A DNA stretch of 64,000 nucleotides from Scyliorhinus canicula (Eukaryota). Below the pieces are notes generated by a model. That model was not told the DNA's origin, did not search any database, and was given only the letters and a program-made list of their open reading frames with translations. Both the position numbers and the translations under genes were made by a program. Shown piece after piece: positions 2,036 through 63,055 of this stretch. Each line of letters starts with the position of its first letter. Position 1 is the stretch's first letter. The stretch covers positions 103,222,622 to 103,286,621 of the forward strand of contig NC_052163.1 of assembly GCF_902713615.1 (NCBI RefSeq), written 5' to 3'.

Positions 2036-2103
2036 CTCAAACTAGTAATATGGCAAACTCTATAGCTGTCCTTTAAAGTGCTGTTTTCAAATAAACGTGA
2101 AAG
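2036..2103 (-). CDS. SEA unit 15 exon C (68 nt)
   Basis: LSRLFENSTLKDSYRVCHITSL; tgcag|...|gtaaga. Confidence 0.8.
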
Positions 2104-5100: not shown

Positions 5101-8100
5101 ACAGACTCTGTTTCATTTCCGATAAATCGGGCCTTCTGTCCCCACCTCTTGCATTGGAAAGAAAAAAACTATTTTTAAAAAATGAGCAACATAACAGTAA
5201 AATGAATATAATTTTAAACAAAAAGTTATAATTATCTAAGTGATCAACAAGCCAATGGTTAACAATCATTCATGTTTAACTAGTTGATCCACTATTGCAG
5301 TGGAACTGTAATTAAATGTGTATGTGTATTTAGTTAATTACTCAAATGAATGTGGAACACCAAAAAAGGATTTATTCACTAGTTAATTTAATGGATAACT
5401 TTGAAAAGTAATTTAATATAATTAGCACAAATTGTCTCAGCTGAAATTGCACGTTGGTACGGATAATCCAATTGAGATATGGAAATACATAAAGAACATT
5501 AGACAGCAATGAAATAAAATGGTCAATAGTTCATTACCAGTTATGAGGAGACTGTTGCTGTCAAGTTTGTAAGTTGCTAAAGTAGAGGTGTTGTTAGTTC
5601 TGTCTCGGAACTCCTGCTTCAGAATAACATTATCCACTTTCTGAGGACCAGTTTTGAAAAAACAAGCAGCTTGCACTTTCACATTTACCCCATTTGGAGA
5701 ACTGCCAAATAAAGCATTAATTATCCATAAGTAATAACATTGACCTCTAGACCAACTTCCATTAGCAATTTTTTTAAAATTGATATCTTTAACCTTAAAC
5801 ATGTATTTCACTTCAGAGGATTTGAAGTATTATTGTTTTTCAGTATTAGAGTGTTAATATATTTTGATCCTGTTGATTAATAGTTGCATTATAAAAATAT
5901 ATTGTATGAATTGTACATGAAGATGCGCACGTAGAGTATTTTACTTTGGATTGTTTAAAGAATGGATGCCCAGAGGTCAACCCAGTGGTAACAGCTGTCA
6001 TGGTTGGTCCAGAGAATCCAGTGATGAGCACTCTAATTGGCCACTGCCAACTATCATTAACAGACTGCAGTGCAACAAATTAAAATGTCAAGTTACAAAA
6101 TGGCCACATTCCAGCTCCTGTTCAGGTACACGGAGGGAGAATTCAGAATGTCCAAATTACCTAACTAAAATGTCTTTCGGGACTTGTGGGAGGAAACCGG
6201 AGCACCCGGAGGAAACCCACGCAGACATAGGGAAAACATGCAGACTCTGCACAGACAGTGACCCAAACCAAGAATCGAACTTGGGACCCTGGTGCTGTGA
6301 AGCAACTGTGTTAACCACTGTGTGGCCGTGGCACCTAATAACTGGGTAGGATGGTTAAATGGATAGCGTGGGTTGGTGAATAGCTGAGTGAGGTGGGTGA
6401 GTTGGTAAGTGGATGAGATGGTAGGTGGGTGAGTGGGTTAGATGGGTTGGGACATAATTGGGTGGTCAAGTTATTAGGAGTAGTCAGGGGAAGTCGGGTC
6501 AGGATGGGGGTGTAGTTGGGATGGGCAGAGAGGTAGTCGGGAGGGATAAATGGGTATTGGGTTATGGAAGGATAGTTGGGTCGGATCGGAGTGTTAGTTG
6601 GGTTACTGGGGGTAGTTGGGTTTGGAGGGGTAGTTAGGTCAGCGATAGTCGGGTCAAGTCAGGGCATAGCCAGGATGTCAGTTGGGGTTGGTTAGGGTGT
6701 CGGTGGGCCGATTGGAGTGCCAATTGTAGTTGCCTGGGTGTTCGATTAGGTTTATTCTCTCCAAGCTTTCCTGGGAAACTATTTTGGTAAGTATTAGGGA
6801 TCTGTGCCAAGTTTCTGACACTTTTGGGTGTCCTGGGAAACAGGGGAATTGTCCATCAGGAGTTAAAACATCCTGGGCAATTGTCACGTCAGGACTTCCA
6901 CAGGATCCTGACACGCATCCTCAGTTGTATGTCCAGTCTGCGACGACATAGAGATGAGAAGATTTGCTGTTAACTCTGAGTCACTGTTATTAATCTTACT
7001 TATAGTTGCACATATCCATTTATAAACAGCTGCTGACTCCTATACAATCCTGTTGTATTGAACTGACGCAGACAGTCCCATAATTCAAGCACATTTTCTA
7101 TTTCCACTGTTCCATGTTTACTTTATAAGCTTACATTTTAAAAAGAATGTTGTTCTCTTTTTTGAAAAAAATAACTACTTCATAGAAGTTTAGTTATCTA
7201 GAAGTATTTGGCATATTTCGTTTGTAATTGGACTCTTTCTTGATGTTCCTGGTCCCAAAACAAGACACAATGAGAATGTGGAAACTCCACACGGACAGTG
7301 ACCTAGAGCCGGGATCGAATCTGGGACCTAGGCGCCATGAGGCAGCAGTGCTAACCACTGTGCGACCGAACTCTAGTCCAATTCTTAATTTAAAATAAAA
7401 GCATTGTCTGTATAAGAACCTCTCAGTCACATTAATAATTCTGAGATACAATTTAAATGTCAGCTGTATGTCAGAAAGAAACTCAAAAATCGAAAGGAGC
7501 AAAATTGTGCTTAGTTCTCAGTCTGTGACTAAATGTAGAACAGCTAAGAAAGAATTCTTACCTTAAAGAGATTACTGTACAATCTAAGAATGCTGCATTT
7601 ATATTGCTATTTCCATACAAAGCATTGAGCTGCAAAAATATAAATTGGGTTTTAATGGGACATTAATATTAATTATTAAGGAATTTTTTTCAATAATAAT
7701 TATTTTGATTTATTTGAATATACCTGATGAGTGATAGTACGCGAAGCCGACTGATATAACAGTGAAGTGGAGCTAAATAAGACTGGATTGTATGGTAGGT
7801 TTGTGATGGCAAAAGACACATTAAAGCATAAAGGTTTCTGGCCCTCAAGGGGATTTTGTTCCTCAGGCACAACTGGTAGTTCATCTAGAAATAGAGAGAA
7901 GTGTAGAATTAAATATATAAAAAGCTTCATTGCAAATCTATTGGTTTTATTCTTTTAAGTTTTACAACAGAGGGAAAAAGGAAGGTCGTTAACATTGCAG
8001 CATGTATAAACTTTGGAAAACACTTCACTCATTTCACAGTTACTTATTAGACACTTTCCACAGATTTTTAGAAGTTCGCCGTATACTAGATTCCCATCTT

Positions 8101-11100
8101 CATACTGAATCATTAGTCCTCCTTCAGAAATAAACTACTCTTAAAAATGTGCAGCCTTTCAAACAAAGAACAAAGAACAAAGAAAAGTACAGCACAGTAA
8201 CAGCCCCTTCGGCCCTCCAAGCCCGTGCAGACCATACTGCCCGTCTAAACTAAAATCTTCCACACTTCCTGGGTCTATATCCCTCTACTCCTATCCTATT
8301 CATGTATTTGTCAAGATGCCCCTTAAATGTCACTATCGTCCCTGCTTCCACCACCTTCTCCGGCAGCGAGTTCCAGGCACCCACTACCCTCTGTGTAAAA
8401 AACTTGCCTCGTACATCTCCTCTAAACTTTGCCCCTCGCACCTTAAACCTATGCCCCCTAGTAATTGACCCCTCTACACTGGGGAAAAGCCTCTGACTAT
8501 CCACTCTGTCTAAGCCCCTCATAATTTTGTAGACCTCTATCAGGTCGCCCCTCAACCTCCGTTGTTACAGTGAGAACAAACCGAGTTTATTCAACCGCTC
8601 CTCATAGCTAATGCCCTCCATACCTGGCAACATCCTGGTAAATCTCTTCTGTACTCTCTAAAGCCTCCACATCCTTCTGGTAGTGTGGCAACCAGAATTG
8701 AACACTCTACTCCAAGTGTTGCCTGTGATGATATGATCTGCATACTCGTCTGCCATTGGGCCAGAACGTCGGCTTACCATTGGCCCTGGTCGGTCATGTG
8801 CCTCTCGACCGATTGGCCGAGAGGCTGAGTTAACCACACCTCTATTAACGAGGTATAAATGCTCTGACGCCTGACGATCGTCCCTTTCCACTGTAGACGA
8901 TCGCAGAGCTGTGTTCTAGTCAATTAAAGCCAGACTTTGGTAAATCACTCGCGTCGCGTGCAATCAATGGTACATCATTGCCTAACTAAGTTTCTATACA
9001 GCTGCAACATGACTTGCCAATTCTTATACTCAATGCCCCGGCCAATAAAGACAAGTATGCCGTATGCCTTCTTGACTACCTTCTCCACCTGTATTGCCCC
9101 TTTCAGTGACCTGTGGACTTGTACACCTAGATATCTCTGATGCTTGAGGGTTCTACCATTTACTGTATGTTCTCTACTTGCATTGGACCTTCCAAAATGC
9201 ATTACCTCACATTTGTCCGGATAAAACTCCATCTGCCATCCCTCCGCCAAAGTCTCCAAATGATCTAAATCCTGCTGTATCCTCTGACAGTCCTCATTGC
9301 TATCCGCAATTCAACCTACCTTTGTGTCGTCTGCAAACGTACTAATCAGACCAGTTACATTTTCCTCCAAATCATTTATATATACTATGAACAGCAAAGG
9401 TCCCAGCACTGATCCCTGCGGAATACCACTAGTCACAGCCCTCCAATTAGAAAAGCACCCTTCCATTGGTACTCTCTGCCTTCTATGACCTAGCCAGTTC
9501 TGTATCCACGTTTCCAGCTCACCCCTGATCCCGAGTGACTTCACCTTTTGTACCAGTCTACCATGAGGAACCTTGTCAAAGGCCTTACTGAAGTCCATAT
9601 AGACAACATCCACTGCCCTACCTGCATAAATCATCTTTGTGACCTCTTAGAAAAACTCTATCAAGTTAGTGAGACATGATCTCCCTTTCACAAAACCATG
9701 CTGCCTCTCACTAATATGCCCATTTGCTTCCAAATGGGAGTAGATCCTGTCTCGAAGAATTCTCTCCAGTAATTTCCCGACCACTGACATAAGGCTCACC
9801 AGCCTGTAGTTCCCTGGATTATCCTGGCTACCCTTCTTAAACAAAGAAACAACATTGACTATTCTCCAGTCCTCTGGGACATCACCTGAAGACAGTGAGA
9901 ATCCAAATATTTCTGTCAAGGCCTCAGCAATTTCCTCTCTAGCCTCCTTCAGTATTCTGGGGTAGATCCCATCCGGCCCTGGGGACTTATCTACCTTAAT
10001 ATTTTTCAAGACGCCCAACACCTCGTCTTTTTGGATCTCAATGTGACCCAGGCTATCTACACACCCTTCTCCAGATTCAACATCCACCAATTCCTTCTCT
10101 TTGGTGAATACTGAAGCAAAGTATTAATTTAGTACCTTGCCCATTTCCTCTGGCTCCACACATAGATTCCCTTGCCTATCCTTCAATGGGCCAACTCTTT
10201 CCCTGGCTACCCTCTTGCTTTTTATGGACGTGTAAAAGCTGCCAATCCTGTCCTTCCCTCAACCAGGTCTCTGTAATGGCAACAACATCATAGTTCCAAG
10301 TACTAATCCAAGCTCTAAGTTCATCTGCCTTACCCGTAATACTTCTTGTATTAAAACATATGCACTTCAGGCCACCAGACCCGCTGTTTTCAGCACCATC
10401 TCCCTGTCTGCTCTTCCTCAGAGCCATACTGGCCCTATACCCTAGTTCTCCCTCAATTCTTTCACCTTCTGACCTATTGCTCCAGTACCCACCCCCCTGC
10501 CATACTAGTTTAAACCCTCCCGTGTGACGCTCGAAACCTCGCGGCCAGTTTGCAACACTACTGACCTCTCCAGTGATATTAGGAGGGTAGAAATTGTCCC
10601 GCATTGTGCCCATCCTATTTGTGTAAAACAAACACATCAAGAGCCAATTTTGAGAACTAACACCTCACGAAAGACGTCTCCTAATATTGCATTGGGCTAT
10701 TTTCCAGCCCATTATATTTTGTAAATGATTTGCAAATAGAAAAAAAACACTGTAAAGACTGGTTAATAAATGCTCCTAATGAGTTGTTAATCCTGCAAAT
10801 CATTGAAAGTGTACAGAAATGAAACCATCATACTCACTGGTCGGTGATGTTATTTCATGATAGCCTGAAAACAAAATAGCGTCACTTAATATTTCACAAT
10901 TTTTCCTCAAACCAGTAGAAAATATGTTATGCTTTTTGTGCAATAACCTTAGTGAAGCAGTTGAAAAGATACAAAAGTTATCATTGTAGTATGCCTTTTC
11001 CAAAGCAGGAGCTGTATTTAAGAGATATCTGTTATGTTCTGATGCTTGGCTGGTAGGAATAATGCACAATAGAACATAGTTCTTGACTAGTTAAAGTATT

Positions 11101-56100: not shown

Positions 56101-59100
56101 TGATTGTTAACGCCCCTTCTGTACCTTGAATTGCCAACACACATGTTAATCCTTCTTGAAACATTTAATTGAACTGAAATTATCCAACTGGTGCTTAATT
56201 TGTTGAGCATTGCAAACTGCTCACTTGCACCAAAAGCAACTTGTTTTCTTATGTGTGTATTATTGGTATGAAATCAAAGATAACCTGATATAACTCCTCG
56301 TGAAACATTCTGTAAATCATAACAGAAACTTTACCAAAATCAGATTAAATCAGAAAAAGTTTGCTTTGAGTGGATAAATGTTCGTAGCTAATTGAAAAAA
56401 AAGCTATAACTCACTGGTTGTCCTGCTTGATTCATGGTAATCTGGAGAACAAAGAAGATTGAGCTGTCACAGATTATCACAATTAAACTCTCTCCATAAA
56501 TATACCATCATTGAAGTCACCCATTTAAATTTTAAAAATCTGATCATTGTCAAATCTCTGAGGAAATCTTTTTGAATGATGGGGGAAGCTATCTGGATCT
56601 TTGTAGCATTCAGTTAAAATTTCTGCGACTATTTTGTAAAAGGAGATAGTAAATCCACAGTTCTGTACATTGCAGAGAACACATCAGTTATCGTTTCGGT
56701 GTTGACATCAATGGACAGATCACTGCTTGAACTAGAGCAGACTGAGAAGTTCACAAAGCAATCACATACGTGTTCTCCTTTTTGTTGATTGATTTATTGA
56801 GTTAGACAATTCGAGTCACTTTTGACAGAGTTGATCAAAATTCTAAAATTGGCTAAACAATTCTGAATCTTCCCATCTTGTAGCAGGTTGTTCAATCCTA
56901 TGTGAACGCATTTATTCTGCTGCTATTTTAATGAACAATTAACATGATTCATAGATTGTCGCCAGAATTGCTGCAGAAGGCCATGGTAGCCAAGTCAGAG
57001 TGTCTTTAAGACAGGGATAGGTTCATGATTAATAAGCGGATCAGAGGTTATTAGGAGGAGGCTGGAGAATGGGGAGTAGAGACATCAGCCATGATTGAAT
57101 GAAGGAGCAGACTCATTGGGCTGAATAGCCTAATTCTGCTCCTATGTTTAATGGTTTTTTCGTCTAACTAATTGCCTGTAAGAATCTTATTGCTTGCCCA
57201 ACGAAGTATGTGGTTATCTATGTTTCCCAGGATCAGCAGATATTACCCGTGTCAAGGACTCGATATCTTTAACAAACCGTTGAGCAGATGAGCTGCATAC
57301 TTCCATATGGTCACATTGTTGTAAGTGTTTTTTTCATTCTGTTCGATATGTTTCTATACACTGAGCAAATGTTAGCCTGTGCAGCATAAAGGGTGGTGCA
57401 GTAAATGACAATTAGATAATTACCATTTACATAGAGGCTGTCGTTGTCTAATATATATGGCCCCAAGTTAGAAATGCCTGCAGTCTTGTTTTCAAACACA
57501 TGATACAGAAGAACTCGGTCAACTTCCGGAATGGTAGAATTGTTTTTGAAGGAACATACTGCTGTCACTGTGCTGCTGTTGGTGTTTACCATGCTGCAAA
57601 GGATCAGAAGAAATATATATTAAAGTGAAATGCATTGATGCAACATAGTTATTAAGATGACGCAGACGAGACTGATAACATCATTGGTAGACAAACCAAA
57701 GACGTGTATTATCTGCAGCAAAACAATGCTTTGTGCAATGAAGATTTCTCTGCAGTCTCAGTTCGTCATGGGAGAAATTGCTTGAGCATTCCATGTATCT
57801 GTGAATTTTCTGTGGAATTCAATATTCTGAACAGAATTGTCCAAGTGGAAGAAGCTTATATTTCGTATGAATGGCCACATTTCTCACCTGATTGAATGAA
57901 ATATGCAGCTTGAGAATGTAACTTTTATGCTGCTCTTCATAAACAGGTCATTGAGCTATAAGGGAAACAGAAACATTGCATCAGTTGAAGAACAAAATGA
58001 ATAACGAAGTAAGATTCTCCTTTTTTTTAAATGTTGTTATTCTCCATTTTCACATTTTCCTCCAAAATTCACACCCCACCCCCAAACAGTAAACGGTAAC
58101 AAATACAAAGTCAATCCCCTTAACAATAACAACGATCCCATCCTCCCACCACCCCAACCACCTGCCAAGATATGCATCCAATAAAACAAACCCTCCCACG
58201 GTGGAAACAAAAACAAAGGAGAAAAAGAGAAAAGAGTTCGGCACCGCCCATGGTCACCATAGAATCCACTCCCACCCCCCCCCCCCCCCCCCCACACTCA
58301 ATGCTGTCCAACCTCTGAAAGAGTACCGTATTTGATACCCAAGAGTTGTAAACACCCCCCCCCCGACCCGCCCGCCCCTCCCCTCCAACTCCTCTCGCCC
58401 ACTGCCTCTTATAAAACTCCTCCCCCCAACCTCGGTTCCTTCCCACCAACTTTCCACCCCGGCTAGACCGCTCAGACCCTGTTCTGCCAGGCTCAGATGG
58501 CCGCAGCCCCTGCCCCCACCTCACTCTAATTCACTGGCCGGTTTAAACCGGCCAGCGCGGAGGCCCCCTCCCGGGTCCCTTTCCCCGTTATCCCATCCCT
58601 AGGAAAGCCCAGAAATCCCCTTTTAGCACACACACCCCACATATCCAGCTACACCACAAATAGCTCTCACTTCGAGTGCAAGTCCCATCACTTCCCTTGT
58701 CCAACTATATACACCATTGGCTCCTTTAGCCCATACACCCGGACGCAGTGAAACAGAAAAGAAGAGACAAAAAAGAAGAAAATACAGTCCTGAGGTTACA
58801 TCGGCACATGGACATTTCTCAATTTCTCAGTTCTGCCACAGTCCTTCTGCCTTCGCAAACTCCTCCGCTGCTTCCGTGGTTCCAGAATAAAAGTCCTTGA
58901 GCTTATAAGTCACCCTCAGCTTCGCTGGATATACAATGCCGCACTGCACCTTGCTGATGTACAGTGCCCTCTTCACCCAGTTGAAAGAAGCCCTCCTCCT
59001 CGCCAGCTCCACCGTAAAGTCCTGGTATACACGTATACCAGCTCCAGCCCACTGCACCACCTGCTTCTGCTTGGCCCAGCACAGGACCTTCTCCTTCACA

Positions 59101-62100
59101 CAGTACCTACGGAAGCACAAAGTCACTACTCTTGGCAGCTCACCCACCTTTGGTACAGGCCTCCCCAACCGATAAGCCCGATCCAATTCATATCGGGAGG
59201 GATCCTCCCCCATGCCCCAATAGCTTCGCCAGCATAGCGGCAAAATACTCCGTCGGCCTCGGCTCTTCAACTCCTTCAGGAAGCCCCACAATCCTCAAAT
59301 TCTGTCGCCTGGACCTGTTTTCCAGGTCTTCCAATTTTCCTCGCAGATTCTTGTTCACCTCCATCACCTTCCGCATCTCCTTCCCCATCGAGGTAAGTTG
59401 ATCACCGTGCTGCGCCACCGTCTACTCCACTACCTTCAGCGCCTCCCCTTGCATCCGCACCTCCACCACTGCACTTCCCACCGCCGTCATCACCGGGGAA
59501 ATTGCCTCCTCCACCAGCAGACTCAAAACCTCCCTCATCTCCTCCCCTCATCGCCTCCAGGTGTTTTGTAAATTGCCTTTCTAATTCTGCAGCCATCACC
59601 TTGGTTACTTCGTCAGCCTTCAGCGATGCGGCCTACCCTAGTGCTCCAGCCTCCTTTTTCCCTAGTGACCCCGTGGTGACCTCTCCTCTCCCCGACGGGC
59701 CCCTCAGCTGCTTTTTAACGACCGTTTTCTTACCGACCCTTGACATCTTTTTCCGCTGTGCCTCCTCTGCACCTTCTCCATGACTTGACGCCTCCGTGGA
59801 CCCTGGGACCGGGCTTAAAGCCCCAAAAATGCCGTTCCCGATTGGGAGCCCTCCGTTGTGCGGCCGCCCTCCCGCACGCCATCACGGAAGTCAGATTCTC
59901 CTTTTAAATGTATTTATATAACTTTCTCACCTCAGTTGCAATCATGCTCGAATGATTGGAGAAGTTTGATTGTATTTCTGGGAATGCTGGCCTGTTTACA
60001 ATGAATGTCACATTATAGACAGTAAGGTTTGGTTCCTCAGTTGGTGTCAGTGTTCGAGTCACAATTGGCATTGGAGCTGCGAAAAGAGAGAAAAAATAAT
60101 TTATTCCACCAAAAGTCTGAATCAGAGAAAATTTTGAAACACAATTTTGCCCTCCAGAAATATTAAGCAACATAACCAGCAGCACTGGGAGATGGAACCG
60201 TAAAGGAATTATAACAATGACTGATTGTTCAAGCCCCTTCTGCACCTTGAATTGTTAGCAAACATGTCAATTGTTCTGGAAACATATAATTGAACTGAAA
60301 ATATCCAACTGGAGCTTAAATTGTTGAGAGTTGCAACCTGTTCACTTTCACCAAAAGCAACAGTTTACTTTTGCATGTATTATCAGTATTAAGACAAAGA
60401 TAGCCTGACAGAACTACAAGTGAATTATTCAATAAATCAGAACAGAAGCTTTCACAAAATCTCATTAAATCTGAATAAGTTTGCTTTGAGTAGATAATGT
60501 TCGTAACTAATTGAAAAAAAAGCTATAACTCACTGGTTGTCCTGCTTGATTCATGGTAATCTGGAGAATAAAGAAGATTGAGCTGTCACAGATTATCACA
60601 ATTAAACTCTCTCCATCAATATACAAACATTGAAGTCACCCATTGAAATGAAAAAAATCTGATCAATATCAAATCTGTGGAGAAATGATTTTGTATCATG
60701 CCGGCACTATCAGGATCTTAGTAATATTCGGTTTAAATTGCTGCAAATATTTTGAAAAAGTAGATACCGAATGAAGAATTGGGGCTGGTTTAGCACAGGG
60801 CCAAATAGCCGGCTTTTAACCAGACCAAGGGAGGCCAGCAGCACAGTTCAATTCCGTACCAGCCTTCCCGAAAAAGCGCCGGGATGAGGCGACTAGGGGC
60901 TTTTCACAGTAACTTCATTTGATGCCTACTTGTGACAACAAGCGATTTCATTTCATGTTAATTGTGTCCATTACAGAGAACACATCATTTATCACATCAA
61001 GGGACAGATCACTGATTGAACAAGAGCAGACTGAGATGTTCACAAATCAATCATATTCGTGTCCTCCTTTTTGTTGATAGATTTATTTAGTGAGACAATT
61101 CGAGTCACTTTTGACAGAGTTCATCAAAATTCTAAAATTTTCTCAACAATTCTGATTCTTGCTACCTTGCAACACATTGTTCAATCCAGTGTAAATGCAT
61201 TCATTCTGCTGCTATTTTAAGGAACAATTAACACGATTCAGAATTGTTACCAAAATTGCCGCAATTCACTTGCCAGGCCAAGTCACTGAGTATCTTTAAG
61301 ACAGAGATAGATAGGTTCATGATTAATAAGGCAATCAGAGGTGTATGAGGAGAAGGGAGGAGAATGGGGATGAGAAATATCAGCCATGATTGAATGGCGA
61401 AGCAGACTTTCTGGGCCGAATGGCGTAACTCCGCTCCTATGTCTCATGGTCTAGAACGTCTAATTGAATGCCTGTAAGAATCTCATTGCTGCTCAGAGAC
61501 GTAAATGGATAGTTTGTTTCCCAGGATCTGTGATATCAACAAAAGCGGGGCGTGGCAAGGACTCAGTGTCTTCAACATGTGATACACAAGAACTCTGTCA
61601 ACTTCCGGAATGGTAGAATCGTTTTTGAAGGAACATACTACTGTCACTGTGCTGCTGTTGGTGTTTACAATTTAGTGTTGAGCAGATGAAATGCATCATT
61701 GCACATGGTCACATCGTTGCATGTGGTGTTGTTCATTCTGTTAGATATGTTTCAATATACTGAGCAAATTTTAGCATGTGGAGCATAAGGAGAGGTGCAG
61801 TAAATGATGATTGGATAATTACCATTTGAATAGAGGCTGTCGCCATCTAATGTATATGGCCCCAAGTTAGAAATGCCTGTAGTCTTGATTTCAAACACAT
61901 GATACACAAGAACTCTGTCAACTTCCGGAATGGTAGAATCGTTTCTGAAGGAACATACCTGCTGTCCTACTGTGCTGCTGTTGGTGTTTACCATGCTGCA
62001 AAGGATCAGAAGAAATTTATATTAAGGCCAATGCATTAATGCAACATAGTTATTAAGATCACTCAGCCGAAACTGATAACACCATTGATTACAAACAGAA

Positions 62101-63055
62101 AACGTGGATGATCTGCAGCAAACAATGCTTTGTGCAATGAAGATTTCTCTGCAGTCTCAGTTGTTCATGGCAGAAATTATCTGTGAATTTTCTGTTGAAT
62201 TCAAGATTCTGAACTGAATTACCAGTAGAAGAAGCTGTTAATATTTGTATGAATGGTCACATTTCTCACCTGAATGAATGAAATATGCAACTTGAGAATG
62301 TAACATTATGCTGCTCTTCATAAACAGGTCATTGAGCTATGAGGCAAACAGAAACATTGCTTTAGGTGAAGGACAAAATGAATACCAATGTATGATTCTC
62401 CTTTTTAAAATATTTATACAACTTTCTCACCTCATTTGCAATCATGCTCGAAATATTGGAAGAGTTTGATTCTATTTCTGGGAATGCTGGCCTGTTTACA
62501 ATGATGTCAATTATAGACAGTAAGATTTGGTTCCTCATTTGGTTTCTGTGTTCGAGCTACAACTGGCATTGGAGCTGTAAAAGAGAGATAAAATAATATT
62601 TTCCATCCAAAGTCTGAATCAGAAAAAATTTGAAACAACAATTATGTACTCCTAAAATATTAGGCAACTTAATCAGCAGCACTGGGAGATCTAAATGCAA
62701 AGGAATTGTAACAATGACTGATTGTTCAAGCCGCTTCTGGACCTTGAATTGTTCGCAAACATGTCATTGTTCTGGAAACATAATTGAAGTGAACATATCT
62801 AACTGGTGCTTAAATTGTTGAGAGTTGCAACCTGCTCACTTACACCAAAGCAACAGTTTACTTTTGCATGTATATCAGTATTACGACAAAGATAGAATAA
62901 CAGAACTACCGATGAATCATTCTATAAATCAGAACAGAAGCTTTACCAAAATTCATCAAATCAAGATAAGTTTGCTTTGAGTGGATAAATGTTTGGTAAC
63001 TAATGAAAAAAAAAAGGCCATACCTCCTGGTTTATCCTGCTTGATTCATGGTAAT
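2036..63055 (-). CDS. MUC16: Mucin-16 (CA125)-like tandem SEA-domain protein, internal part of a multi-exon gene; 14 complete + 1 partial SEA units; gene extends past both window ends
   Basis: Repeated spliced unit FNVTFTITSLPY...LNLIYRKSDINTEFTDCKVISLS-ATDSKKTKVYANCSF...VYHQFNYNTENITDLGPYSLDRDSLYVNGYHE matches the MUC16 SEA signature (two-Cys loop; LGPYxLDxxSLYVNG end). Exons are GT-AG bounded with consistent phases. The symbol rests on recognised similarity; orthology is untested. Confidence 0.8.
2361..2551 (-). CDS. SEA unit 15 linker+B exon (191 nt)
   Basis: GCEELKSTVEPATPAERDHLIISEQQGDLTFQVNFTIINYNFTDELQIPSSPEYEHMTTNIMRQ; ttttag|...|gtatgg. Confidence 0.8.
3032..3219. mobile_element. 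Short (~190 bp) Harbinger-type MITE
   Basis: GGCTGGATTTTCC...AATTCCGGAC imperfect TIRs; internally similar to 24839-25027. Confidence 0.55.
3682..4111. mobile_element. GC-rich MITE-like element
   Basis: Ends GGAGAATTGCACCC; similar to 4802-5133; left boundary approximate. Confidence 0.45.
4802..5133. mobile_element. GC-rich MITE-like element
   Basis: GGGTGGAATTCACC...GATAAATCGGGCC; shares cggctaaac internal motif with 3682-4111. Confidence 0.45.
5538..5701 (-). CDS. SEA unit 14 exon D (164 nt, divergent)
   Basis: SPNGVNVKVQAACFFKTGPQKVDNVILKQEFRDRTNNTSTLATYKLDSNSLLIT; phase 2-1 preserved. Confidence 0.8.
6100..6335 (-). mobile_element. tRNA-derived SINE
   Basis: Reverse complement of head ACAGTGGTTAACACAGTTGCTTCACAGCACCAGGGTCCCAAGTTCGATT. 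Confidence 0.75.
7562..7629 (-). CDS. SEA unit 14 exon C (68 nt)
   Basis: LNALYGNSNINAAFLDCTVISL. Confidence 0.85.
7724..7884 (-). CDS. SEA unit 14 exon B (161 nt, divergent)
   Basis: ELPVVPEEQNPLEGQKPLCFNVSFAITNLPYNPVLFSSTSLLYQSASRTITHQ. Confidence 0.85.
8161..10545 (-). mobile_element. CR1 LINE, degenerate ORF2 (endonuclease fragment + RT) with 3' (TTCTTTG)n tail; internal deletion and nested solo LTR
   Basis: ORFs with KSPGPDGIYPRILKE, YMDFSKAFDKVPHGRL, GIPQGSVLGPLLF, FADDTKVG, DVVAITETWL. Confidence 0.92.
8724..8977 (+). mobile_element. Solo LTR inserted in CR1, 5-bp TSD TTGCC
   Basis: TTGCC|TGTGATG...TACATCA|TTGCC; TATAAA and ATTAAA inside. Confidence 0.85.
10838..10864 (-). CDS. SEA unit 14 exon A (27 nt, GYHEITSPT)
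   Basis: AG/GT. Confidence 0.8.
11453..11622 (-). CDS. SEA unit 13 exon D (170 nt)
   Basis: ATDSKKTKVYANCSFNNNSAAQQVDRV...LGPYSLDRDSLYVN. Confidence 0.85.
12549..12616 (-). CDS. SEA unit 13 exon C (68 nt)
   Basis: LNLIYRKSDINTEFTDCKVISL. Confidence 0.85.
12689..12915 (+). mobile_element. tRNA-derived SINE in B-C intron of unit 13
   Basis: GGGCAGCACAGTGGCGTAGTGGTTAGC...GGTTCGATTCC; absent from paralogous introns. Confidence 0.85.
12941..13077 (-). CDS. SEA unit 13 exon B (137 nt)
   Basis: QISIQNHPPPGFNVTFTITSLPYMESLHDHSSLLYQSASTIIIHQ. Confidence 0.85.
13404..13430 (-). CDS. SEA unit 13 exon A (27 nt)
   Basis: GYHETTSPT; AG/GT. Confidence 0.8.
13715..13884 (-). CDS. SEA unit 12 exon D (170 nt)
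   Basis: ATDSKKTKAYANCSFNNNSAAQKVDRV...LGPYSLDRDSLYVN. Confidence 0.85.
14785..14852 (-). CDS. SEA unit 12 exon C (68 nt)
   Basis: LNLIYRRSEINTEFTDCKVISL. Confidence 0.85.
14940..15076 (-). CDS. SEA unit 12 exon B (137 nt)
   Basis: QISIQNQSPPGFNVTFTITSLPYMESLHDHTSLLYQSASTIIIHQ. Confidence 0.85.
15409..15435 (-). CDS. SEA unit 12 exon A (27 nt)
   Basis: GYHETTSPT; AG/GT. Confidence 0.8.
15714..15883 (-). CDS. SEA unit 11 exon D (170 nt)
   Basis: ATDSKKTKVYANCSFNNNSAAQQVDRV...LRPYSLDRDSLYVN. Confidence 0.85.
16409..16476 (-). CDS. SEA unit 11 exon C (68 nt)
   Basis: LNLIYRKSDINTEFTDCKVISL. Confidence 0.85.
16564..16700 (-). CDS. SEA unit 11 exon B (137 nt)
   Basis: QISIQNQPPPGFNVTFTITSLPYMESLHDHTSLLYQSASTIIAHQ. 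Confidence 0.85.
17034..17060 (-). CDS. SEA unit 11 exon A (27 nt)
   Basis: GYHETTSPT; AG/GT. Confidence 0.8.
17352..17521 (-). CDS. SEA unit 10 exon D (170 nt)
   Basis: ATNSKKTKAYAICSFNNNSATQQVDRV...LGPYSLDRDSLYVN. Confidence 0.85.
18198..18909. mobile_element. Harbinger-type MITE, 712 bp, TSD AAT
   Basis: AAT|GGGCGAAATTCTCC...GGAGAATCGCGCCC|AAT; empty site gaatcaatg at ~14464 and ~16088. Confidence 0.85.
19229..19296 (-). CDS. SEA unit 10 exon C (68 nt)
   Basis: INLIYRKSDINTEFTDCKVISL. Confidence 0.85.
19384..19520 (-). CDS. SEA unit 10 exon B (137 nt)
   Basis: QISIQNQSPPGFNVTFTITSLPYMESLHDHTSLLYQSASTIIAHQ. Confidence 0.85.
19853..19879 (-). CDS. SEA unit 10 exon A (27 nt, GYHETTSPT)
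   Basis: AG/GT. Confidence 0.8.
20103..20782. mobile_element. Harbinger-type MITE, 680 bp, TSD ATA
   Basis: ATA|GGACGGGATTCT...AAAATACTGCCC|ATA; empty site near 13650. Confidence 0.8.
20842..21011 (-). CDS. SEA unit 9 exon D (170 nt)
   Basis: ASDSKNTKAYAICSFNNNSAAQQVDRVTVYHQFNYNTENITDLGPYSLDRDSLYVN. Confidence 0.85.
21476..21730 (-). mobile_element. tRNA-derived SINE with CR1-like tail
   Basis: catagaatcatagaa tail; reverse-strand head with GGTTCGATTCC. Confidence 0.7.
23182..23238. repeat. 26-bp tandem duplication (x2.2)
   Basis: agagcatcaatgtRggaatttcacaa repeated. Confidence 0.8.
23255..23530 (-). mobile_element. tRNA-derived SINE
   Basis: Head GGGCGGCACGTTAGCACAGTGGTTAGCACTGC on minus strand. 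Confidence 0.75.
23786..23853 (-). CDS. SEA unit 9 exon C (68 nt)
   Basis: LNIIYRKSAINTEFTDCKVISL. Confidence 0.85.
23941..24077 (-). CDS. SEA unit 9 exon B (137 nt)
   Basis: EISTQNQPPPGFNVTFTITSLPYNELLHTHTSLLYQSASTIITHQ. Confidence 0.85.
24300..24515 (-). mobile_element. SINE with L2-like tail
   Basis: ttgtcacaagtaggcttacattaacactgcaatgaagttactgtgaaaag tail; GGTTCAATTCCCG B-box on minus strand. Confidence 0.65.
24637..24663 (-). CDS. SEA unit 9 exon A (27 nt, GYHESTPPT)
   Basis: AG/GT, phase 1-1. Confidence 0.8.
24839..25027. mobile_element. Short Harbinger-type MITE, TSD AAT
   Basis: AAT|GGCTCGATTCTTCGG...CGGAGATTTCCGGCC|AAT. Confidence 0.75.
25142..25311 (-). CDS. SEA unit 8 exon D (170 nt)
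   Basis: ATESKKTKAYAICSFNNNSAAQQVDRVIVYHQFNYNTENITDLEPYSLDRDSLYVN. Confidence 0.85.
26003..26305 (-). mobile_element. tRNA-derived SINE
   Basis: Same family as the other SINEs; atcatagaatc tail. Confidence 0.75.
27055..29709 (+). mobile_element. 5'-truncated L1/Tx1-like LINE (RT C-terminal part, zinc knuckle, 3'UTR), 14-bp TSD AATTAAGTAGATGC
   Basis: Starts at HRVSLYADDLLLY; GGLGLPNRMYYYWAAN; CERC..ANHVHMFW; TSD at 27041-27054 and 29710-29723; frameshifted. Confidence 0.9.
27917..28602. mobile_element. Harbinger-type MITE nested in the L1, TSD TTG
   Basis: Splits L1 codons gat ttg ttt cta; right end GGAGAATCCCGCCC; left TIR degenerate. Confidence 0.8.
29879..30190 (+). mobile_element. tRNA-derived SINE with L2-like tail
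   Basis: GGGCAGCACGATAGCACAGTGGTTAGC...gtgacactaataaagatt. Confidence 0.8.
30204..30392 (+). mobile_element. tRNA-derived SINE (second family)
   Basis: GGGGCCGGTTTAGCTCAGTTG...GGTTCAATTCCC. Confidence 0.6.
30400..33540 (-). mobile_element. Degenerate CR1 LINE ORF2 with nested MITE
   Basis: VYMDFNKAFHKVPYGRL, LYRTLVRAQLESCVQFWSPHY, VLDLVLVN motifs. Confidence 0.85.
32437..33094. mobile_element. Harbinger-type MITE in CR1, TSD AAG
   Basis: AAG|GGCCGGGATTCTCC...GGAGAATTCTGTCC|AAG. Confidence 0.8.
33960..34470 (-). mobile_element. tRNA-derived SINE interrupted by a 218-bp inverted CR1 copy
   Basis: SINE tail 33960-34088 and head 34307-34470 flank the insert. Confidence 0.75.
34708..35140. mobile_element. 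Composite LTR-like fragments (plus-strand solo LTR ~34708-34967 and a minus-strand LTR remnant)
   Basis: TGTAAT...TACCACA with TATATAAA and AATAAA; second piece has tttatt and ends ACCACA. Confidence 0.45.
35392..35459 (-). CDS. SEA unit 8 exon C (68 nt)
   Basis: LHSIFRKSDINAAFTDCKVISL. Confidence 0.85.
35548..35663 (-). CDS. SEA unit 8 exon B (116 nt, shortened linker)
   Basis: AAPGFNVTFTITGLPYIESLHDHTSLLYQSASTVVTHQ. Confidence 0.8.
36256..36282 (-). CDS. SEA unit 8 exon A (27 nt, EYHESTPPI)
   Basis: ttcag|AATATC...ATCG|gtaagt. Confidence 0.8.
36735..37500 (-). mobile_element. CR1 LINE 3' fragment
   Basis: VHRSLKVATQVDKV...LEYCAQFW; FFTQRMVSALNVLPGEVVEA. Confidence 0.85.
37685..37854 (-). 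CDS. SEA unit 7 exon D (170 nt)
   Basis: TTSKQKTKVYAICSFSNTSVTEQVDRVTVYHQFNYNTKDITTLGPYSLDKNSLYVN. Confidence 0.85.
38440..38770 (+). mobile_element. tRNA-derived SINE with (ATTCT)n-like tail
   Basis: Family-typical body; gggattctatgattctat tail. Confidence 0.75.
38782..38849 (-). CDS. SEA unit 7 exon C (68 nt)
   Basis: LNTTFRNSDIRTAFTDCRVISL. Confidence 0.85.
38937..39073 (-). CDS. SEA unit 7 exon B (137 nt)
   Basis: DAPNENQVSSGFNVTFIIISLPYLQALHDNTSRLYQSASTIITHQ; NAGNAG acceptor. Confidence 0.85.
39387..39413 (-). CDS. SEA unit 7 exon A (27 nt, GDHESTTPT)
   Basis: ttttcag|GCGACC...ACTA|gtgtgt. Confidence 0.7.
40082..40712. mobile_element. GC-rich MITE nested in the Harbinger element
   Basis: GGGTGGGATGCACC...GATGAATCCAGCAC ends. 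Confidence 0.55.
41078..41420 (+). mobile_element. Near full-length tRNA-derived SINE
   Basis: A box/B box head (GGTTCGATTCCC), CR1-like tail gggccgaagggcctgttctgtgctgtactgttctaattcta. Confidence 0.85.
44154..44353. mobile_element. Short Harbinger-type MITE
   Basis: AAA|GGGTGGGATTTTC...GGAAATCCCAGCC|AAA. Confidence 0.65.
44477..44503 (-). CDS. Extra linker micro-exon A' (27 nt, DYHKTEPMI)
   Basis: ttttcag|ATTACCATAAAACAGAACCAATGATCG|gtgagt; same length and phase as the A exons. Confidence 0.7.
45100..46862 (+). mobile_element. Degenerate CR1 LINE ORF2
   Basis: AVDVVYMDSCKTFDKVSHGRL, KFVDDTKIGG, LEYCVQFWLPYY. Confidence 0.88.
47790..47959 (-). CDS. SEA unit 6 exon D (170 nt)
   Basis: VVNGDSYTVTAICSFKNYSTIPAVDRVFMYDVFENKTKDISNLGPYRLANNSLYVN. 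Confidence 0.85.
48428..48495 (-). CDS. SEA unit 6 exon C (68 nt)
   Basis: LNDLFKGSSIKATFSRCLVKSL. Confidence 0.85.
48588..48733 (-). CDS. SEA unit 6 exon B (146 nt)
   Basis: AIPALTVTPTPRRKGTPIDYNVTFIITSPRFQEIQLNSFFQTMKIGKE. Confidence 0.85.
49051..49313. mobile_element. pogo/Tigger-type MITE (Tc1-mariner superfamily)
   Basis: TIRs CAAGTTGAGCATTCCTAAT / CAGATTCAGCATCCCTTATCCG; TA on the right flank. Confidence 0.65.
49420..49446 (-). CDS. SEA unit 6 exon A (27 nt, DFHESPHVS)
   Basis: tccag|ATTTCC...AGCA|gtaagt. Confidence 0.75.
49772..49941 (-). CDS. SEA unit 5 exon D (170 nt)
   Basis: MVNTNSSTVTAVCSFKNESTIQQVDRVLVYHVFENNTNDISNLGPYTLDNDSLYLN. Confidence 0.85.
50105..50421 (-). mobile_element. 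tRNA-derived SINE
   Basis: Head GGGCAGCACGGTAGCACAAGTGGATAGC on minus strand. Confidence 0.85.
50527..50594 (-). CDS. SEA unit 5 exon C (68 nt)
   Basis: LNDLFQKSSINATFSSCIFHSS; donor GTCGGA. Confidence 0.8.
50689..50834 (-). CDS. SEA unit 5 exon B (146 nt)
   Basis: PMSVVTLTPTPTEEPNLTDYNVTFIINSPAFQEIVSNSSNHTRMIANE. Confidence 0.85.
51284..51310 (-). CDS. SEA unit 5 exon A (27 nt)
   Basis: DYHESSRTT; AG/GT. Confidence 0.8.
52028..52503 (-). mobile_element. Solo LTR, imperfect TSD GTCTT/GTCAT
   Basis: TGT...ACA ends; absent at the paralogous sites ~54900 and ~61450. Confidence 0.75.
52784..52953 (-). CDS. SEA unit 4 exon D (170 nt)
   Basis: MVNTNSTTVTAICSFKNYSTIPEIGRVLVYHVFENKTRDISNLGPYILDDDSLYVN. 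Confidence 0.85.
53251..53318 (-). CDS. SEA unit 4 exon C (68 nt)
   Basis: LNDLFKKSSINVTFSSCIFHSF. Confidence 0.85.
53411..53556 (-). CDS. SEA unit 4 exon B (146 nt)
   Basis: LMPVVTTTQTPTEEPNLTNYNVTFIVIMPAFPEFQSIILNHTSLITNE. Confidence 0.85.
53913..54095 (+). mobile_element. SINE (GGGGCTGTTTAGCTCAC family)
   Basis: tRNA-like head, (TTTCA)n tail; absent from paralogous introns. Confidence 0.75.
54163..54189 (-). CDS. SEA unit 4 exon A (27 nt)
   Basis: DYHESSRTT; AG/GT. Confidence 0.8.
55182..55350 (-). CDS. SEA unit 3 exon D (169 nt; 1-nt homopolymer deletion gives a frameshift)
   Basis: Paralogs are 170 nt; T4 at 55301-55304 versus T5 elsewhere. Confidence 0.7.
55648..55715 (-). CDS. SEA unit 3 exon C (68 nt)
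   Basis: LNDLFMKSSINVTFSSCIFHSF. Confidence 0.85.
55810..55955 (-). CDS. SEA unit 3 exon B (146 nt)
   Basis: PMPIVTLTQTPTEEPNLTFYNVTFIVNRPAFPEIQSNSSNHSSMIANE. Confidence 0.85.
56415..56441 (-). CDS. SEA unit 3 exon A (27 nt)
   Basis: DYHESSRTT; AG/GT. Confidence 0.8.
57424..57593 (-). CDS. SEA unit 2 exon D (170 nt)
   Basis: MVNTNSSTVTAVCSFKNNSTIPEVDRVLLYHVFENKTAGISNLGPYILDNDSLYVN. Confidence 0.85.
57888..57955 (-). CDS. SEA unit 2 exon C (68 nt)
   Basis: LNDLFMKSSIKVTFSSCIFHSI; AG/GT. Confidence 0.85.
58025..59892 (-). mobile_element. ORF1-only L1-like non-autonomous retrotransposon with intact 5' end, 3'UTR and polyA; 13-bp TSD AGATTCTCCTTTT
   Basis: 5' GACTTCCGTGATGGCG; ORF1 LEDLENRSRRQNLRIVGLPEGVE, IRVYQDFTVELARRRASF, GIVYPAKLRVTY (frameshifted); no ORF2; TSD at 58012-58024 and 59893-59905. 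Confidence 0.88.
59931..60076 (-). CDS. SEA unit 2 exon B (146 nt)
   Basis: PMPIVTRTLTPTEEPNLTVYNVTFIVNRPAFPEIQSNFSNHSSMIATE; AG/GT. Confidence 0.85.
60534..60560 (-). CDS. SEA unit 2 exon A (27 nt, DYHESSRTT)
   Basis: tccag|ATTACC...ACCA|gtgagt. Confidence 0.8.
60781..60956 (+). mobile_element. SINE (same family as 53913-54095)
   Basis: GGGGCTGGTTTAGCACAG head; gatttcatttcat tail; absent from paralogous introns. Confidence 0.75.
61823..61995 (-). CDS. SEA unit 1 exon D (173 nt)
   Basis: MVNTNSSTV...VCSFRNDSTIPEVDRVLVYHVFEIKTTGISNLGPYTLDGDSLY. Confidence 0.7.
62270..62336 (-). CDS. SEA unit 1 exon C (67 nt, 1-nt deletion)
   Basis: LNDLFMKSSI...SCIFHSF; AG/GT ends. Confidence 0.6.
62431..62574 (-). 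CDS. SEA unit 1 exon B (144 nt, two 1-nt deletions versus 146-nt paralogs)
   Basis: TPMPVVARTQKPNEEPNLTVY...MIANE; AG/GT ends. Confidence 0.6.
63024..63055 (-). CDS. SEA unit 1 exon A (degenerate 32-nt copy of the 27-nt linker micro-exon)
   Basis: ATTACCATGAATCAAGCAGG after tccag; donor region has indels relative to paralogs. Confidence 0.45.

What the first reader, a model, noticed from the sequence alone, without database searches (positions are those of the whole stretch)
2036..63055. MUC16/CA125-type SEA array in a probable cartilaginous fish, built from a 4-exon module
Seen: at least 15 SEA units with the two-Cys loop (C-x18-C), a 68-nt exon C and the LGPYSLDRDSLYVNG end, and no GSVVV autoproteolysis motif. 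Recalled knowledge: mammalian MUC16 repeats are ~156 aa on five exons with a C-x19-C loop and a longer S/T/P linker. Here the repeat units are 134-137 aa on four exons, so one linker exon appears to be absent. Inference: a MUC16-type gene predates the split of jawed vertebrates and was amplified independently in this lineage.
Basis: partly seen in the sequence, partly recalled or inferred. Interest (0 to 1): 0.7.

Follow-up and report, generated by a model that had tools for sequence, protein, structure and literature searches.

The report
Catshark MUC16 (CA125) gene repeat array
This stretch of small-spotted catshark DNA carries most of the repeat region of a shark version of MUC16, the cell-surface mucin that gives the human CA125 cancer marker; the gene is real, spliced and already auto-annotated, so it is an ordinary though evolutionarily informative gene.

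Summary
On the minus strand, window 63055-2036 carries 14 MUC16-type SEA units plus the first two exons of a 15th, atypical membrane-proximal SEA. Each unit is built from four exons of 27, 137 or 146, 68 and 170 nt (134 or 137 aa) with a C-x18-C loop. Public transcript contigs join the exons exactly at the predicted GT..AG sites.

The window is Scyliorhinus canicula. RefSeq already calls part of it 'mucin-16-like' (XP_038632498.1), but that model starts inside an intron, skips one intact unit and leaves out the upstream units. Two units carry frame-breaking indels.

- The four-exon module is ancestral: sturgeon and turtle have it too, and mammals added a PTS exon.
- C-x18-C is shared by cartilaginous and basal ray-finned fishes; C-x19-C belongs to lobe-finned fishes and amniotes.
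- The family is older than jawed vertebrates, because a hagfish homologue has a near-identical tail.
- Elasmobranchs have two paralogues.
- The repeat units lack GSVVV, but the terminal SEA carries a conserved G-S (GSIKV) at the MUC1-type self-cleavage hairpin, where human has DSVLV.

This is a new member of a known kind, of modest interest.

The parts
61823..63055 (-). Unit 1 (upstream subfamily), defective. Exons: A from 63055 (donor lost), B 62574-62431 (144 nt, two 1-nt deletions, in-frame TGA), C 62336-62270 (67 nt), D 61995-61823 (173 nt, open).
61576..61668 (-). Truncated copy of the 5' part of a D exon, lying inside the intron between unit 1 and unit 2.
57424..60560 (-). Unit 2. Exons: A 60560-60534, B 60076-59931 (146 nt), C 57955-57888 (68 nt), D 57593-57424 (170 nt). 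137 aa, C-x18-C.
55182..56441 (-). Unit 3. Exons: A 56441-56415, B 55955-55810, C 55715-55648, D 55350-55182. The D exon is 169 nt because of a 1-nt deletion, which shifts the frame.
52784..54189 (-). Unit 4. Exons: A 54189-54163, B 53556-53411, C 53318-53251, D 52953-52784. 137 aa.
49772..51310 (-). Unit 5. Exons: A 51310-51284, B 50834-50689, C 50594-50527, D 49941-49772. 137 aa.
47790..49446 (-). Unit 6, a divergent member of the upstream subfamily. Exons: A 49446-49420, B 48733-48588, C 48495-48428, D 47959-47790.
44477..44503 (-). Lone 27-nt A-type micro-exon (x-YHKTEPMI) in the 8.4-kb gap between unit 6 and unit 8. No B, C or D exon accompanies it. It is in frame whether included or skipped.
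37685..39413 (-). Unit 8, the first of the downstream subfamily. Exons: A 39413-39387, B 39073-38937 (137 nt), C 38849-38782, D 37854-37685. 134 aa.
25142..36282 (-). Unit 9. Exons: A 36282-36256, B 35663-35548 (116 nt), C 35459-35392, D 25311-25142. The C-D intron is 10 kb. 127 aa. XP_038632498.1 uses this splicing.
20842..24663 (-). Unit 10. Exons: A 24663-24637, B 24077-23941, C 23853-23786, D 21011-20842. The 134-aa frame is intact, but the RefSeq model omits this unit.
17352..19879 (-). Unit 11. Exons: A 19879-19853, B 19520-19384, C 19296-19229, D 17521-17352. 134 aa.
15714..17060 (-). Unit 12. Exons: A 17060-17034, B 16700-16564, C 16476-16409, D 15883-15714. The D(unit 11)-A, B-C and C-D junctions are seen in transcript contigs.
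13715..15435 (-). Unit 13. Exons: A 15435-15409, B 15076-14940, C 14852-14785, D 13884-13715. The A-B junction is seen as a loose end at 15076.
11453..13430 (-). Unit 14. Exons: A 13430-13404, B 13077-12941, C 12616-12549, D 11622-11453. The C-D junction and the A-B loose end are seen in transcript contigs.
5538..10864 (-). Unit 15, the divergent last canonical unit. Exons: A 10864-10838, B 7884-7724 (161 nt), C 7629-7562, D 5701-5538 (164 nt). 140 aa. It groups with the last units of other sharks.
2036..2551 (-). First two exons of the terminal, membrane-proximal SEA: 2551-2361 (191 nt) and 2103-2036 (68 nt). Its third exon (PGSIKV...), the TM exon and the tail exon lie beyond the window's low end.

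Best explanation
The window holds most of the SEA-repeat region and the start of the membrane-proximal region of a Scyliorhinus canicula MUC16 (CA125) homologue. It is transcribed from the minus strand. It is one of two elasmobranch co-orthologues of mammalian MUC16. The product is a type I membrane glycoprotein, probably made up as follows.

- A long string of rigid SEA domains, each pinned by a disulfide across its beta2-beta3 hairpin (the C-x18-C loop) and each carrying 3-9 N-glycosylation sequons.
- Short Ser/Thr/Pro linkers of about 20 aa between the domains.
- One atypical SEA next to the membrane.
- A single TM helix.
- A cytoplasmic tail of about 25 aa with the conserved Y..Q...G.Y..HL motif.

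Shown here: the exon structure, the splicing, the SEA fold class, and the homology of units, TM and tail to MUC16. Inferred from the mammalian protein: it forms part of the glycocalyx barrier of wet epithelia. Also inferred: the ectodomain can be released at the membrane-proximal SEA. That SEA keeps G-S at the position where MUC1-type SEA modules cleave themselves.

The array grew by tandem duplication of the whole four-exon module, introns included. Old subfamilies are shared with other sharks. Units 11-14 are about 90% identical over exons plus introns and belong to the catshark-specific unit 9-14 clade, so they are the most recent copies. A few copies (units 1 and 3) are decaying.
For: Identity: every exon from 36282 down to 2036 that the RefSeq model uses (it omits unit 10) is 100% identical to XP_038632498.1, 'mucin-16-like', of S. 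canicula.

SEA domains: Pfam SEA scores 413.9 bits over 7 stretches on that protein, and single exons match the two halves of the profile.

MUC16 type: the D-exon profile hits only MUC16 SEA chains in the PDB, with E 1.5e-12 to 1.3e-7. It finds 226 proteins in 1.84 billion. Of the 30 top-150 hits whose names were looked up, 25 are called mucin-16 or mucin-16-like; the other five are unnamed or hypothetical entries.

Fold: the AlphaFold models have pLDDT 86-87. Their best PDB matches are MUC16 SEA structures (1ivz, 7sa9, 8vm1, 8gkl), with TM 0.80-0.89 for a repeat unit. The two cysteines sit on beta2 and beta3.

TM and tail: nine residues are invariant from sharks to mammals.

Gene structure: the 68-nt exon is invariant in shark, sturgeon, turtle and mink, and the module lengths fit the unit periods.

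Splicing: contigs of three runs from two studies join D|C, C|B and A|D exactly at the predicted boundaries with GT..AG ends. Loose ends give the A|B junction and the A-to-unit-15 B junction.

Duplication history.

G-S conservation: at least 90% in 38 sequences, and the pair sits at the beta2-beta3 turn in the model.
Against: No N-terminal signal peptide or long PTS (mucin) domain was seen. The window and all shark gene models are 5'-incomplete, so 'mucin' rests on homology of the C-terminal two thirds.

Units 1 and 3 have frame-breaking indels, so part of the upstream array may be skipped or dead.

RNA word shares differ by run. Runs X1-X3 hold the downstream units but not the upstream ones, and X8 shows the reverse. 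One mRNA covering both arrays is therefore not shown.

The runs with spliced contigs are only guessed to be RNA. An oligo-dT run (X5) gave no exon reads.

Self-cleavage at GSIKV is untested. The human homologous site (DSVLV) is not cleaved (PMC4456727).

Function and tissue are inferred, not shown.
Confidence: 0.9

Rival explanations
1. The window holds two transcription units, not one. The upstream array (units 1-6, 63055-47790) would be a separate or partly dead gene. The downstream array (units 8-15 plus the terminal SEA) would be the functional TM-anchored gene.
For: RefSeq splits the region: a 542-aa SEA model ends near window 38910 and XP_038632498.1 starts at 37687. RNA word shares are reciprocal: X1-X3 give 0.07 downstream and 0.01 upstream, while X8 gives 0.10 upstream and 0.00 downstream. 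Units 1 and 3 carry frameshifts. An 8.4-kb gap with only a lone micro-exon separates the two arrays.
Against: No TM, tail or terminal-SEA exon and no signal-peptide exon was found between the arrays. A bamboo-shark model (chiPu_0015812) joins both unit subfamilies and the C-terminus in one protein. All exon phases are compatible. The RefSeq start is plainly artificial, because it is intronic.
Confidence: 0.2
2. The array is a lineage-specific multi-SEA gene that only resembles MUC16 by convergence or by sharing generic SEA features. On this view it is not a MUC16 homologue.
For: SEA domains occur in many proteins. No N-terminal mucin domain was seen. No tree against other SEA families was built here.
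Against: The D-exon profile finds no non-MUC16 SEA chain in the PDB at E up to 10. The hallmark C-loop, the LGPY.LD..SLYVNG end and the 68-nt exon are shared with mammalian MUC16. The terminal SEA, TM and tail align with mammalian MUC16 right up to the C-terminus.
Confidence: 0.03
3. The gene is a decaying pseudogene array. The transcript contigs would then be noise or would come from a paralogue.
For: Two of the 14 units have frame-breaking indels. The RefSeq models are fragmentary. There are no exon reads in the one raw RNA run that was laid.
Against: Twelve units, the terminal SEA, the TM and the tail have open frames and canonical splice sites. The contigs match this locus at 95-100% and splice precisely. 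The orthologues in five other elasmobranchs keep the same C-terminus.
Confidence: 0.05

Closest known systems
Human and mammalian MUC16 (CA125)
   Same: Both have a tandem array of SEA units, each with a two-Cys loop and the LGPY(T/S)LD(R/K)(D/N)SLYVNG end. Both have a 68-nt middle exon and a D exon of about 170 nt. Both have an atypical SEA with the MUC1-like hairpin near the membrane, a single TM beginning (L)P(F/Y)WAII, and a short tail with Y..Q...G.Y..HL.
   Different: The shark units are 134-137 aa on four exons, against 156 aa on five exons in mammals, which have an extra 57-72-nt PTS exon. The loop is C-x18-C against C-x19-C, and the D exon is 170 against 173 nt. The G-S-type SEA is the last one before the membrane in shark, whereas amniotes have one more SEA after it. 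Shark has GSIKV where human has DSVLV. Sharks have two paralogues. The N-terminal PTS domain was not found here.
MUC1-type self-cleaving SEA module (G|SVVV)
   Same: The terminal SEA has G-S at the beta2-beta3 turn, followed by an alternating hydrophobic strand (GSIKV). This G-S is conserved in the homologous SEA of rays, bichir, sturgeon, lungfish, frogs, reptiles (GSVVV) and many mammals.
   Different: Cleavage was not tested. Lys at +3 is unusual. The 14 repeat units have an 18-residue disulfide loop in place of the tight hairpin and no G-S.
Chicken Muc16 (Duraisamy 2006; Lang 2006, PMC1552070)
   Same: It is a non-mammalian MUC16 recognised by its multiple SEA domains.
   Different: That work found none in Fugu and did not cover cartilaginous fishes. 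Here the family is traced to sharks, rays, bichir, sturgeon, lungfish and hagfish.
Hagfish (Myxine glutinosa) 'mucin-16-like' (UniRef UPI0035901235)
   Same: The terminal G-S SEA (GLRIGSVKT), the TM and the tail (..YGTYFPHLDMRKVY) are clearly homologous.
   Different: The hagfish repeat SEAs have a short C-x15-C hairpin (SGPLVVV) and longer proline-rich linkers. They have no 18- or 19-residue loop.

Membership tests
MUC16 / CA125 family | Tandem array of SEA domains (Pfam PF01390) | tested here: met
   Pfam SEA scores 413.9 bits over 7 stretches on XP_038632498.1. Single exons match profile positions 3-35 and 62-106. There are 14 units plus a terminal SEA in the window.
MUC16 / CA125 family | Two conserved cysteines forming a C-loop in every repeat | tested here: met
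   All 11 spliced units have C-x18-C. Human has C-x19-C (PMC10829539). The loop is 18 residues in all cartilaginous and basal ray-finned fishes examined, and 19 in lungfish, reptiles and mammals. In the model the cysteines sit on beta2 and beta3.
MUC16 / CA125 family | Repeat units closest to MUC16 SEA rather than to other SEA families, by sequence and by fold | tested here: met
   The PDB profile search hits only MUC16 chains. The top five Foldseek matches are MUC16 SEA, with TM 0.80-0.89. No joint tree with MUC1, IMPG, agrin or TMPRSS was built.
MUC16 / CA125 family | Repeat module gene structure, including the 68-nt exon | tested here: met
   Exon lengths are 27/137-146/68/170 in shark, 33/101/68/170 in sturgeon, 27/143/68/173 in turtle and 36/57-72/122-131/68/173 in mink.
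MUC16 / CA125 family | Single TM and short conserved cytoplasmic tail | tested here: met
   These lie in XP_038632498.1 residues 985-1036, whose exons are just outside the window. Nine residues are invariant from sharks to mammals.
MUC16 / CA125 family | Very large N-terminal Ser/Thr/Pro-rich O-glycosylated domain | not testable with these tools
   It is not in the window. No shark model reaches a true N-terminus, and the locus DNA outside the window could not be fetched.
MUC16 / CA125 family | One-to-one orthology with mammalian MUC16 | tested here: not met
   In the tree of the terminal SEA rooted on hagfish, the chondrichthyan clade has support 99/98. It contains two groups that each hold both sharks and rays. 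Group I, which includes this gene, has support 100/100. The gene is therefore a co-orthologue.
MUC16 / CA125 family | Transcribed and spliced as predicted | tested here: met
   GT..AG joints are seen at 11622|12549, 15883|16409, 16476|16564 and 17060|17352. The A|B junction appears as loose ends. The tissue is unknown.
Self-cleaving SEA modules (MUC1 type) | G-S-hydrophobic motif at the beta2-beta3 turn | tested here: met
   This applies to the terminal SEA only: PGSIKV, with G73/S74 between strands 62-71 and 74-83 of the model. The G-S is at least 90% conserved in 38 homologues. It is not met in the 14 repeat units.
Self-cleaving SEA modules (MUC1 type) | Actual autoproteolysis between G and S | not testable with these tools
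   This needs expression of the domain. The human DSVLV site is not cleaved (PMC4456727).

The most novel reading that the evidence does not exclude
The membrane-proximal SEA of MUC16 was ancestrally a MUC1-type self-cleaving module and still is in sharks (GSIKV) and most other vertebrates. On this reading the human DSVLV site is a derived loss. That would explain why human MUC16 is released by a different, juxtamembrane cleavage. Together with the stepwise hairpin history (C-x15-C in hagfish, x18 in cartilaginous and ray-finned fishes, x19 in lobe-finned fishes and amniotes) and the mammalian gain of a PTS exon, the shark gene would give a compact, tractable model of how CA125 is built and shed.
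Probability: 0.4. Interest if true: 0.5.

Novelty: new member of a known kind. Interest (0 to 1): 0.33.

Why it matters
MUC16/CA125 is clinically important, yet it is hard to study because it is huge and repetitive, and how it is shed is still debated. The shark gene shows which features are old. These are the 68-nt exon, the four-exon unit, the disulfide loop, the tail motif and a G-S hairpin in the SEA next to the membrane. It also shows which features are mammalian additions: the extra PTS exon, the 19-residue loop and the extra last SEA.

It also shows that the RefSeq models of this locus are fragmented and partly wrong. None of this overturns current views. It is an orthologue with useful comparative value. 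I found no paper on MUC16 in cartilaginous fishes in the searchable library.

Tried and rejected
- Tandem Repeats Finder found nothing, because the units of 1.6-4.4 kb exceed its period limit.
- Rfam found nothing in the window.
- An HMM search for extra B, C or D exons in the two large gaps (47790-39413 and 35392-25311) found none. There is no ORF of 190 aa or more anywhere in the window.
- Word-indexed protein searches with the C-terminal region returned only 6-7 proteins each, so the taxon sampling is patchy. No teleost or lamprey hit was named, but absence was not tested.
- Locus DNA for the catshark gene beyond the window and for the bichir gene could not be fetched. Synteny and the last three exons were therefore not read directly.
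- Literature searches for MUC16 in sharks found only unrelated papers. Lang et al. 2016 covers gel-forming mucins only.
- The joints that appear to skip one unit (12616|14940, 13884|16409, 13430|15714) were not taken as exon skipping. The flanking exon ends are near-identical between units and the contigs are short.
- I considered the GC-rich intron inserts and the intronic SINE as possible exons. I rejected this: there are no other copies in the window, no frame continuity and no splice support.
- I did not hand the spliced multi-exon protein to the tools as typed letters. The database protein XP_038632498.1 (P0013) served instead.

Full report
**What is in the sequence**

The motif ...LGPY.LD..SLYVNG is found only in minus-strand frames, 14 times. 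tblastn and exon alignments define a repeated module of four exons. All of them are flanked by AG and GT.

- **Exon A** is a 27-nt micro-exon. It enters and leaves in phase 1 and encodes G/D-YHE followed by Ser/Thr/Pro.
- **Exon B** is 146 nt in units 1-6 and 137 nt in units 8, 10-14. It holds the rest of the linker and the first strand and helix (..YNVTF.. or ..GFNVTFTITSL..).
- **Exon C** is exactly 68 nt in 13 of the 14 units. It holds the first Cys.
- **Exon D** is 170 nt. It holds the second Cys and the LYVNG end.

These results come. Spliced units come to 411 nt (137 aa) or 402 nt (134 aa). Unit 9 is 127 aa and unit 15 is 140 aa. All 11 units that I spliced have C-x18-C, 3-9 N-x-S/T sequons and no G-S-x-x-x motif.

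After unit 15 come two exons of a different SEA, at 2551-2361 and 2103-2036. The second is again 68 nt.

Some parts are defective or odd.

- Unit 1 has lost its micro-exon donor. Its B exon is 144 nt with an in-frame TGA, and its C exon is 67 nt.
- Unit 3's D exon has a 1-nt deletion.
- A truncated D copy lies at 61668-61576.
- A lone micro-exon lies at 44503-44477, in an 8.4-kb gap without other exons.

**What it is**

Single exons already match the two halves of Pfam SEA. A profile of the 13 open D exons hits only MUC16 SEA chains in the PDB. These are human 8vm1, 8gkl and 7sa9 at E 1.5e-12 to 4e-11, and mouse 1ivz at 1.3e-7. No other SEA family appears at E up to 10.

The same profile finds 226 proteins among 1.84 billion. 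One of them, P0013, is 100% identical to the window's exons from 36282 to 2036. It is XP_038632498.1, 'mucin-16-like', of Scyliorhinus canicula, assembly GCA_902713615.2. This agrees with earlier notes of this scan that call the genome a catshark.

Of the 30 top-150 hits whose names were looked up, 25 are called mucin-16 or mucin-16-like. The other five are unnamed or hypothetical entries. The named ones come from sharks, rays, bichir, reedfish, sturgeon, paddlefish, lungfish, a frog, turtles, squamates and mammals.

P0013 continues beyond the window with several further parts:

- the third exon of the terminal SEA;
- a TM helix beginning LPYWAII;
- a tail of about 25 aa.

The TM and tail align with mammalian MUC16 to the last residues, with nine invariant positions. 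AlphaFold models of a repeat unit and of the terminal SEA have pLDDT 86.7 and 86.3. Both match MUC16 SEA structures best, ahead of TMPRSS SEA domains.

**Expression and splicing**

Contigs of three public runs from two studies, laid on 11400-17400, show these joints:

- 11622|12549 (C-D);
- 15883|16409 (C-D);
- 16476|16564 (B-C);
- 17060|17352 (D-A).

All have GT..AG on the minus strand and fall exactly at my predicted boundaries. Loose ends at the B starts 13077 and 15076 read the end of the micro-exon. This confirms the 27-nt exon and its GTGAGT donor. A loose end beside a micro-exon reads the start of unit 15's B exon.

There are caveats. The runs are only guessed to be RNA. The tissues are coded. 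One oligo-dT run showed reads only on an intronic SINE.

**State of the annotation**

XP_038632498.1 starts with 25 residues read from intron sequence (37687-37613) and skips the intact unit 10. A separate 542-aa model ends near 38910. Another 'mucin-16-like' fragment, XP_038632669.1, has upstream-type units that are not identical to those in the window. The array therefore continues beyond 64000.

A bamboo-shark model joins both unit subfamilies to the same C-terminus, which favours one gene. However, the word shares of RNA runs are reciprocal for the two arrays, so one mRNA is not shown.

**Comparison with other vertebrates**

I mapped three annotated proteins back onto their loci.

| Species | Exon lengths of one unit (nt) |
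|---|---|
| Catshark | 27 / 137 or 146 / 68 / 170 |
| Sturgeon | 33 / 101 / 68 / 170 |
| Turtle | 27 / 143 / 68 / 173 |
| Mink | 36 / 57-72 / 122-131 / 68 / 173 |

The four-exon module with its micro-exon is therefore the ancestral jawed-vertebrate state. Mammals inserted a second, PTS-rich linker exon, which gives the 156-aa unit.

The Cys loop is 18 residues in every cartilaginous fish and in bichir, reedfish, sturgeon and paddlefish. It is 19 in lungfish, reptiles and mammals, and 17 in one frog. The extra codon sits in exon D (170 versus 173 nt). Human values of 156 aa and 19 intervening residues are confirmed in PMC10829539.

**Amplification history**

In a tree of 101 units, cartilaginous-fish units separate from bony-vertebrate units (SH-aLRT 94). 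Units cluster by lineage:

| Lineage or group | Support |
|---|---|
| Paddlefish | 98 |
| Bichir | 99 |
| Frog | 100 |
| Worm lizard | 100 |
| Mink | 96 |
| Catshark units 9-14 | 97 |
| Unit 15 with the last units of bamboo shark and sawshark | 100 |
| Downstream subfamily, shared with other sharks | 98 |

Whole-unit DNA identity, introns included, is about 0.90 for units 11-14, 0.76-0.86 for units 2-5 and about 0.57 for unit 6.

Expansion was therefore independent, or homogenised, within major lineages. In the catshark it was layered in time. Concerted evolution cannot be told apart from independent duplication with these data.

A hagfish protein called 'mucin-16-like' (P0167) has a G-S-type last SEA, a TM beginning LPFWVI and a tail ending YGTYFPHLDMRKVY. 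That tail is nearly the tetrapod sequence. Its repeat SEAs have only a C-x15-C hairpin.

In a tree of the terminal SEA rooted on hagfish, all cartilaginous-fish sequences form one clade (99/98). It contains two groups that each hold both sharks and rays. Group I, with support 100/100, includes this gene. The catshark gene is thus one of two elasmobranch co-orthologues.

**The cleavage hairpin**

The terminal SEA, however, reads ..SLSPGSIKVSTFCYF... G and S are at least 90% conserved across 38 homologous domains:

- sharks, rays, bichir and sturgeon: GS(I/V)KV;
- turtles: GSVVV;
- mink: GSMLV.

In the model the G-S sits at the turn between strands 62-71 and 74-83. This domain corresponds to the human penultimate SEA. 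Its DSVLV site was proposed as analogous to MUC1's GSVVV, but it is not cleaved in human cells (PMC4456727).

In fishes and frogs this SEA is the last one before the membrane. Amniotes have one more after it. Whether the shark domain cleaves itself is an inference that needs an expression test.

**Verdict**

The finding is real and well read. It is a shark member of a known gene family that automatic annotation has already named. The added value is comparative: the ancestral module, the loop-length character, the conserved G-S hairpin, the hagfish homologue and the elasmobranch duplication. It also corrects the gene model.

Noticed in passing
window 12606-13007 (intron between the B and C exons of unit 14): An insert of about 240 nt makes this intron 324 nt instead of 87. 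It has transcript-contig depth of 10^4-10^5 in every run laid. Loose ends carry a tRNA-like box (GGTTCGATCC), so it is probably a tRNA-derived SINE that is abundant in catshark RNA. Rfam gave no hit.
   Followed up: partly
window 20240-20840 and 18350-18920: These are GC-rich inserts in the introns of units 11 and 12, with long stop-free frames on both strands. There is no second copy in the window and no splice support. Their nature is unknown.
   Followed up: partly
window 37613-37687 and 20842-24663: RefSeq XP_038632498.1 begins with 25 residues translated from intron sequence and omits the intact unit 10. The array is split over at least two or three gene models.
   Followed up: yes
window 47700-57700 versus 11400-17400: RNA runs that hold the downstream units (X1-X3, share 0.07) hold almost none of the upstream units (0.01). 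Run X8 holds the upstream units (0.10) but not the downstream ones (0.00). This is a hint of separate transcripts, isoforms or tissues.
   Followed up: partly
P0167 (Myxine glutinosa, not in the window): The hagfish 'mucin-16-like' protein has two alternating SEA unit types, each with a C-x15-C hairpin reading SGPLVVV, and a tail almost identical to that of tetrapods. MUC16 therefore predates the split between cyclostomes and jawed vertebrates.
   Followed up: partly
P0018, P0008, P0002, P0003, P0168 (other elasmobranchs): A second MUC16-like paralogue group exists in sharks and rays. In S. torazame both paralogues lie on one 249-kb contig. I did not look for the catshark's own copy of the second paralogue.
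   Followed up: partly
L002 (turtle) and L003 (mink) loci: Amniotes carry an additional canonical-type SEA between the G-S-type SEA and the TM. Fishes and frogs do not. The turtle's G-S-type SEA has a perfect GSVVV.
   Followed up: partly
window 44477-44503: A lone 27-nt micro-exon lies between the two arrays. If it is spliced in together with the micro-exon at 39413, it would give two consecutive linker exons, reminiscent of the mammalian two-linker-exon arrangement.
   Followed up: no
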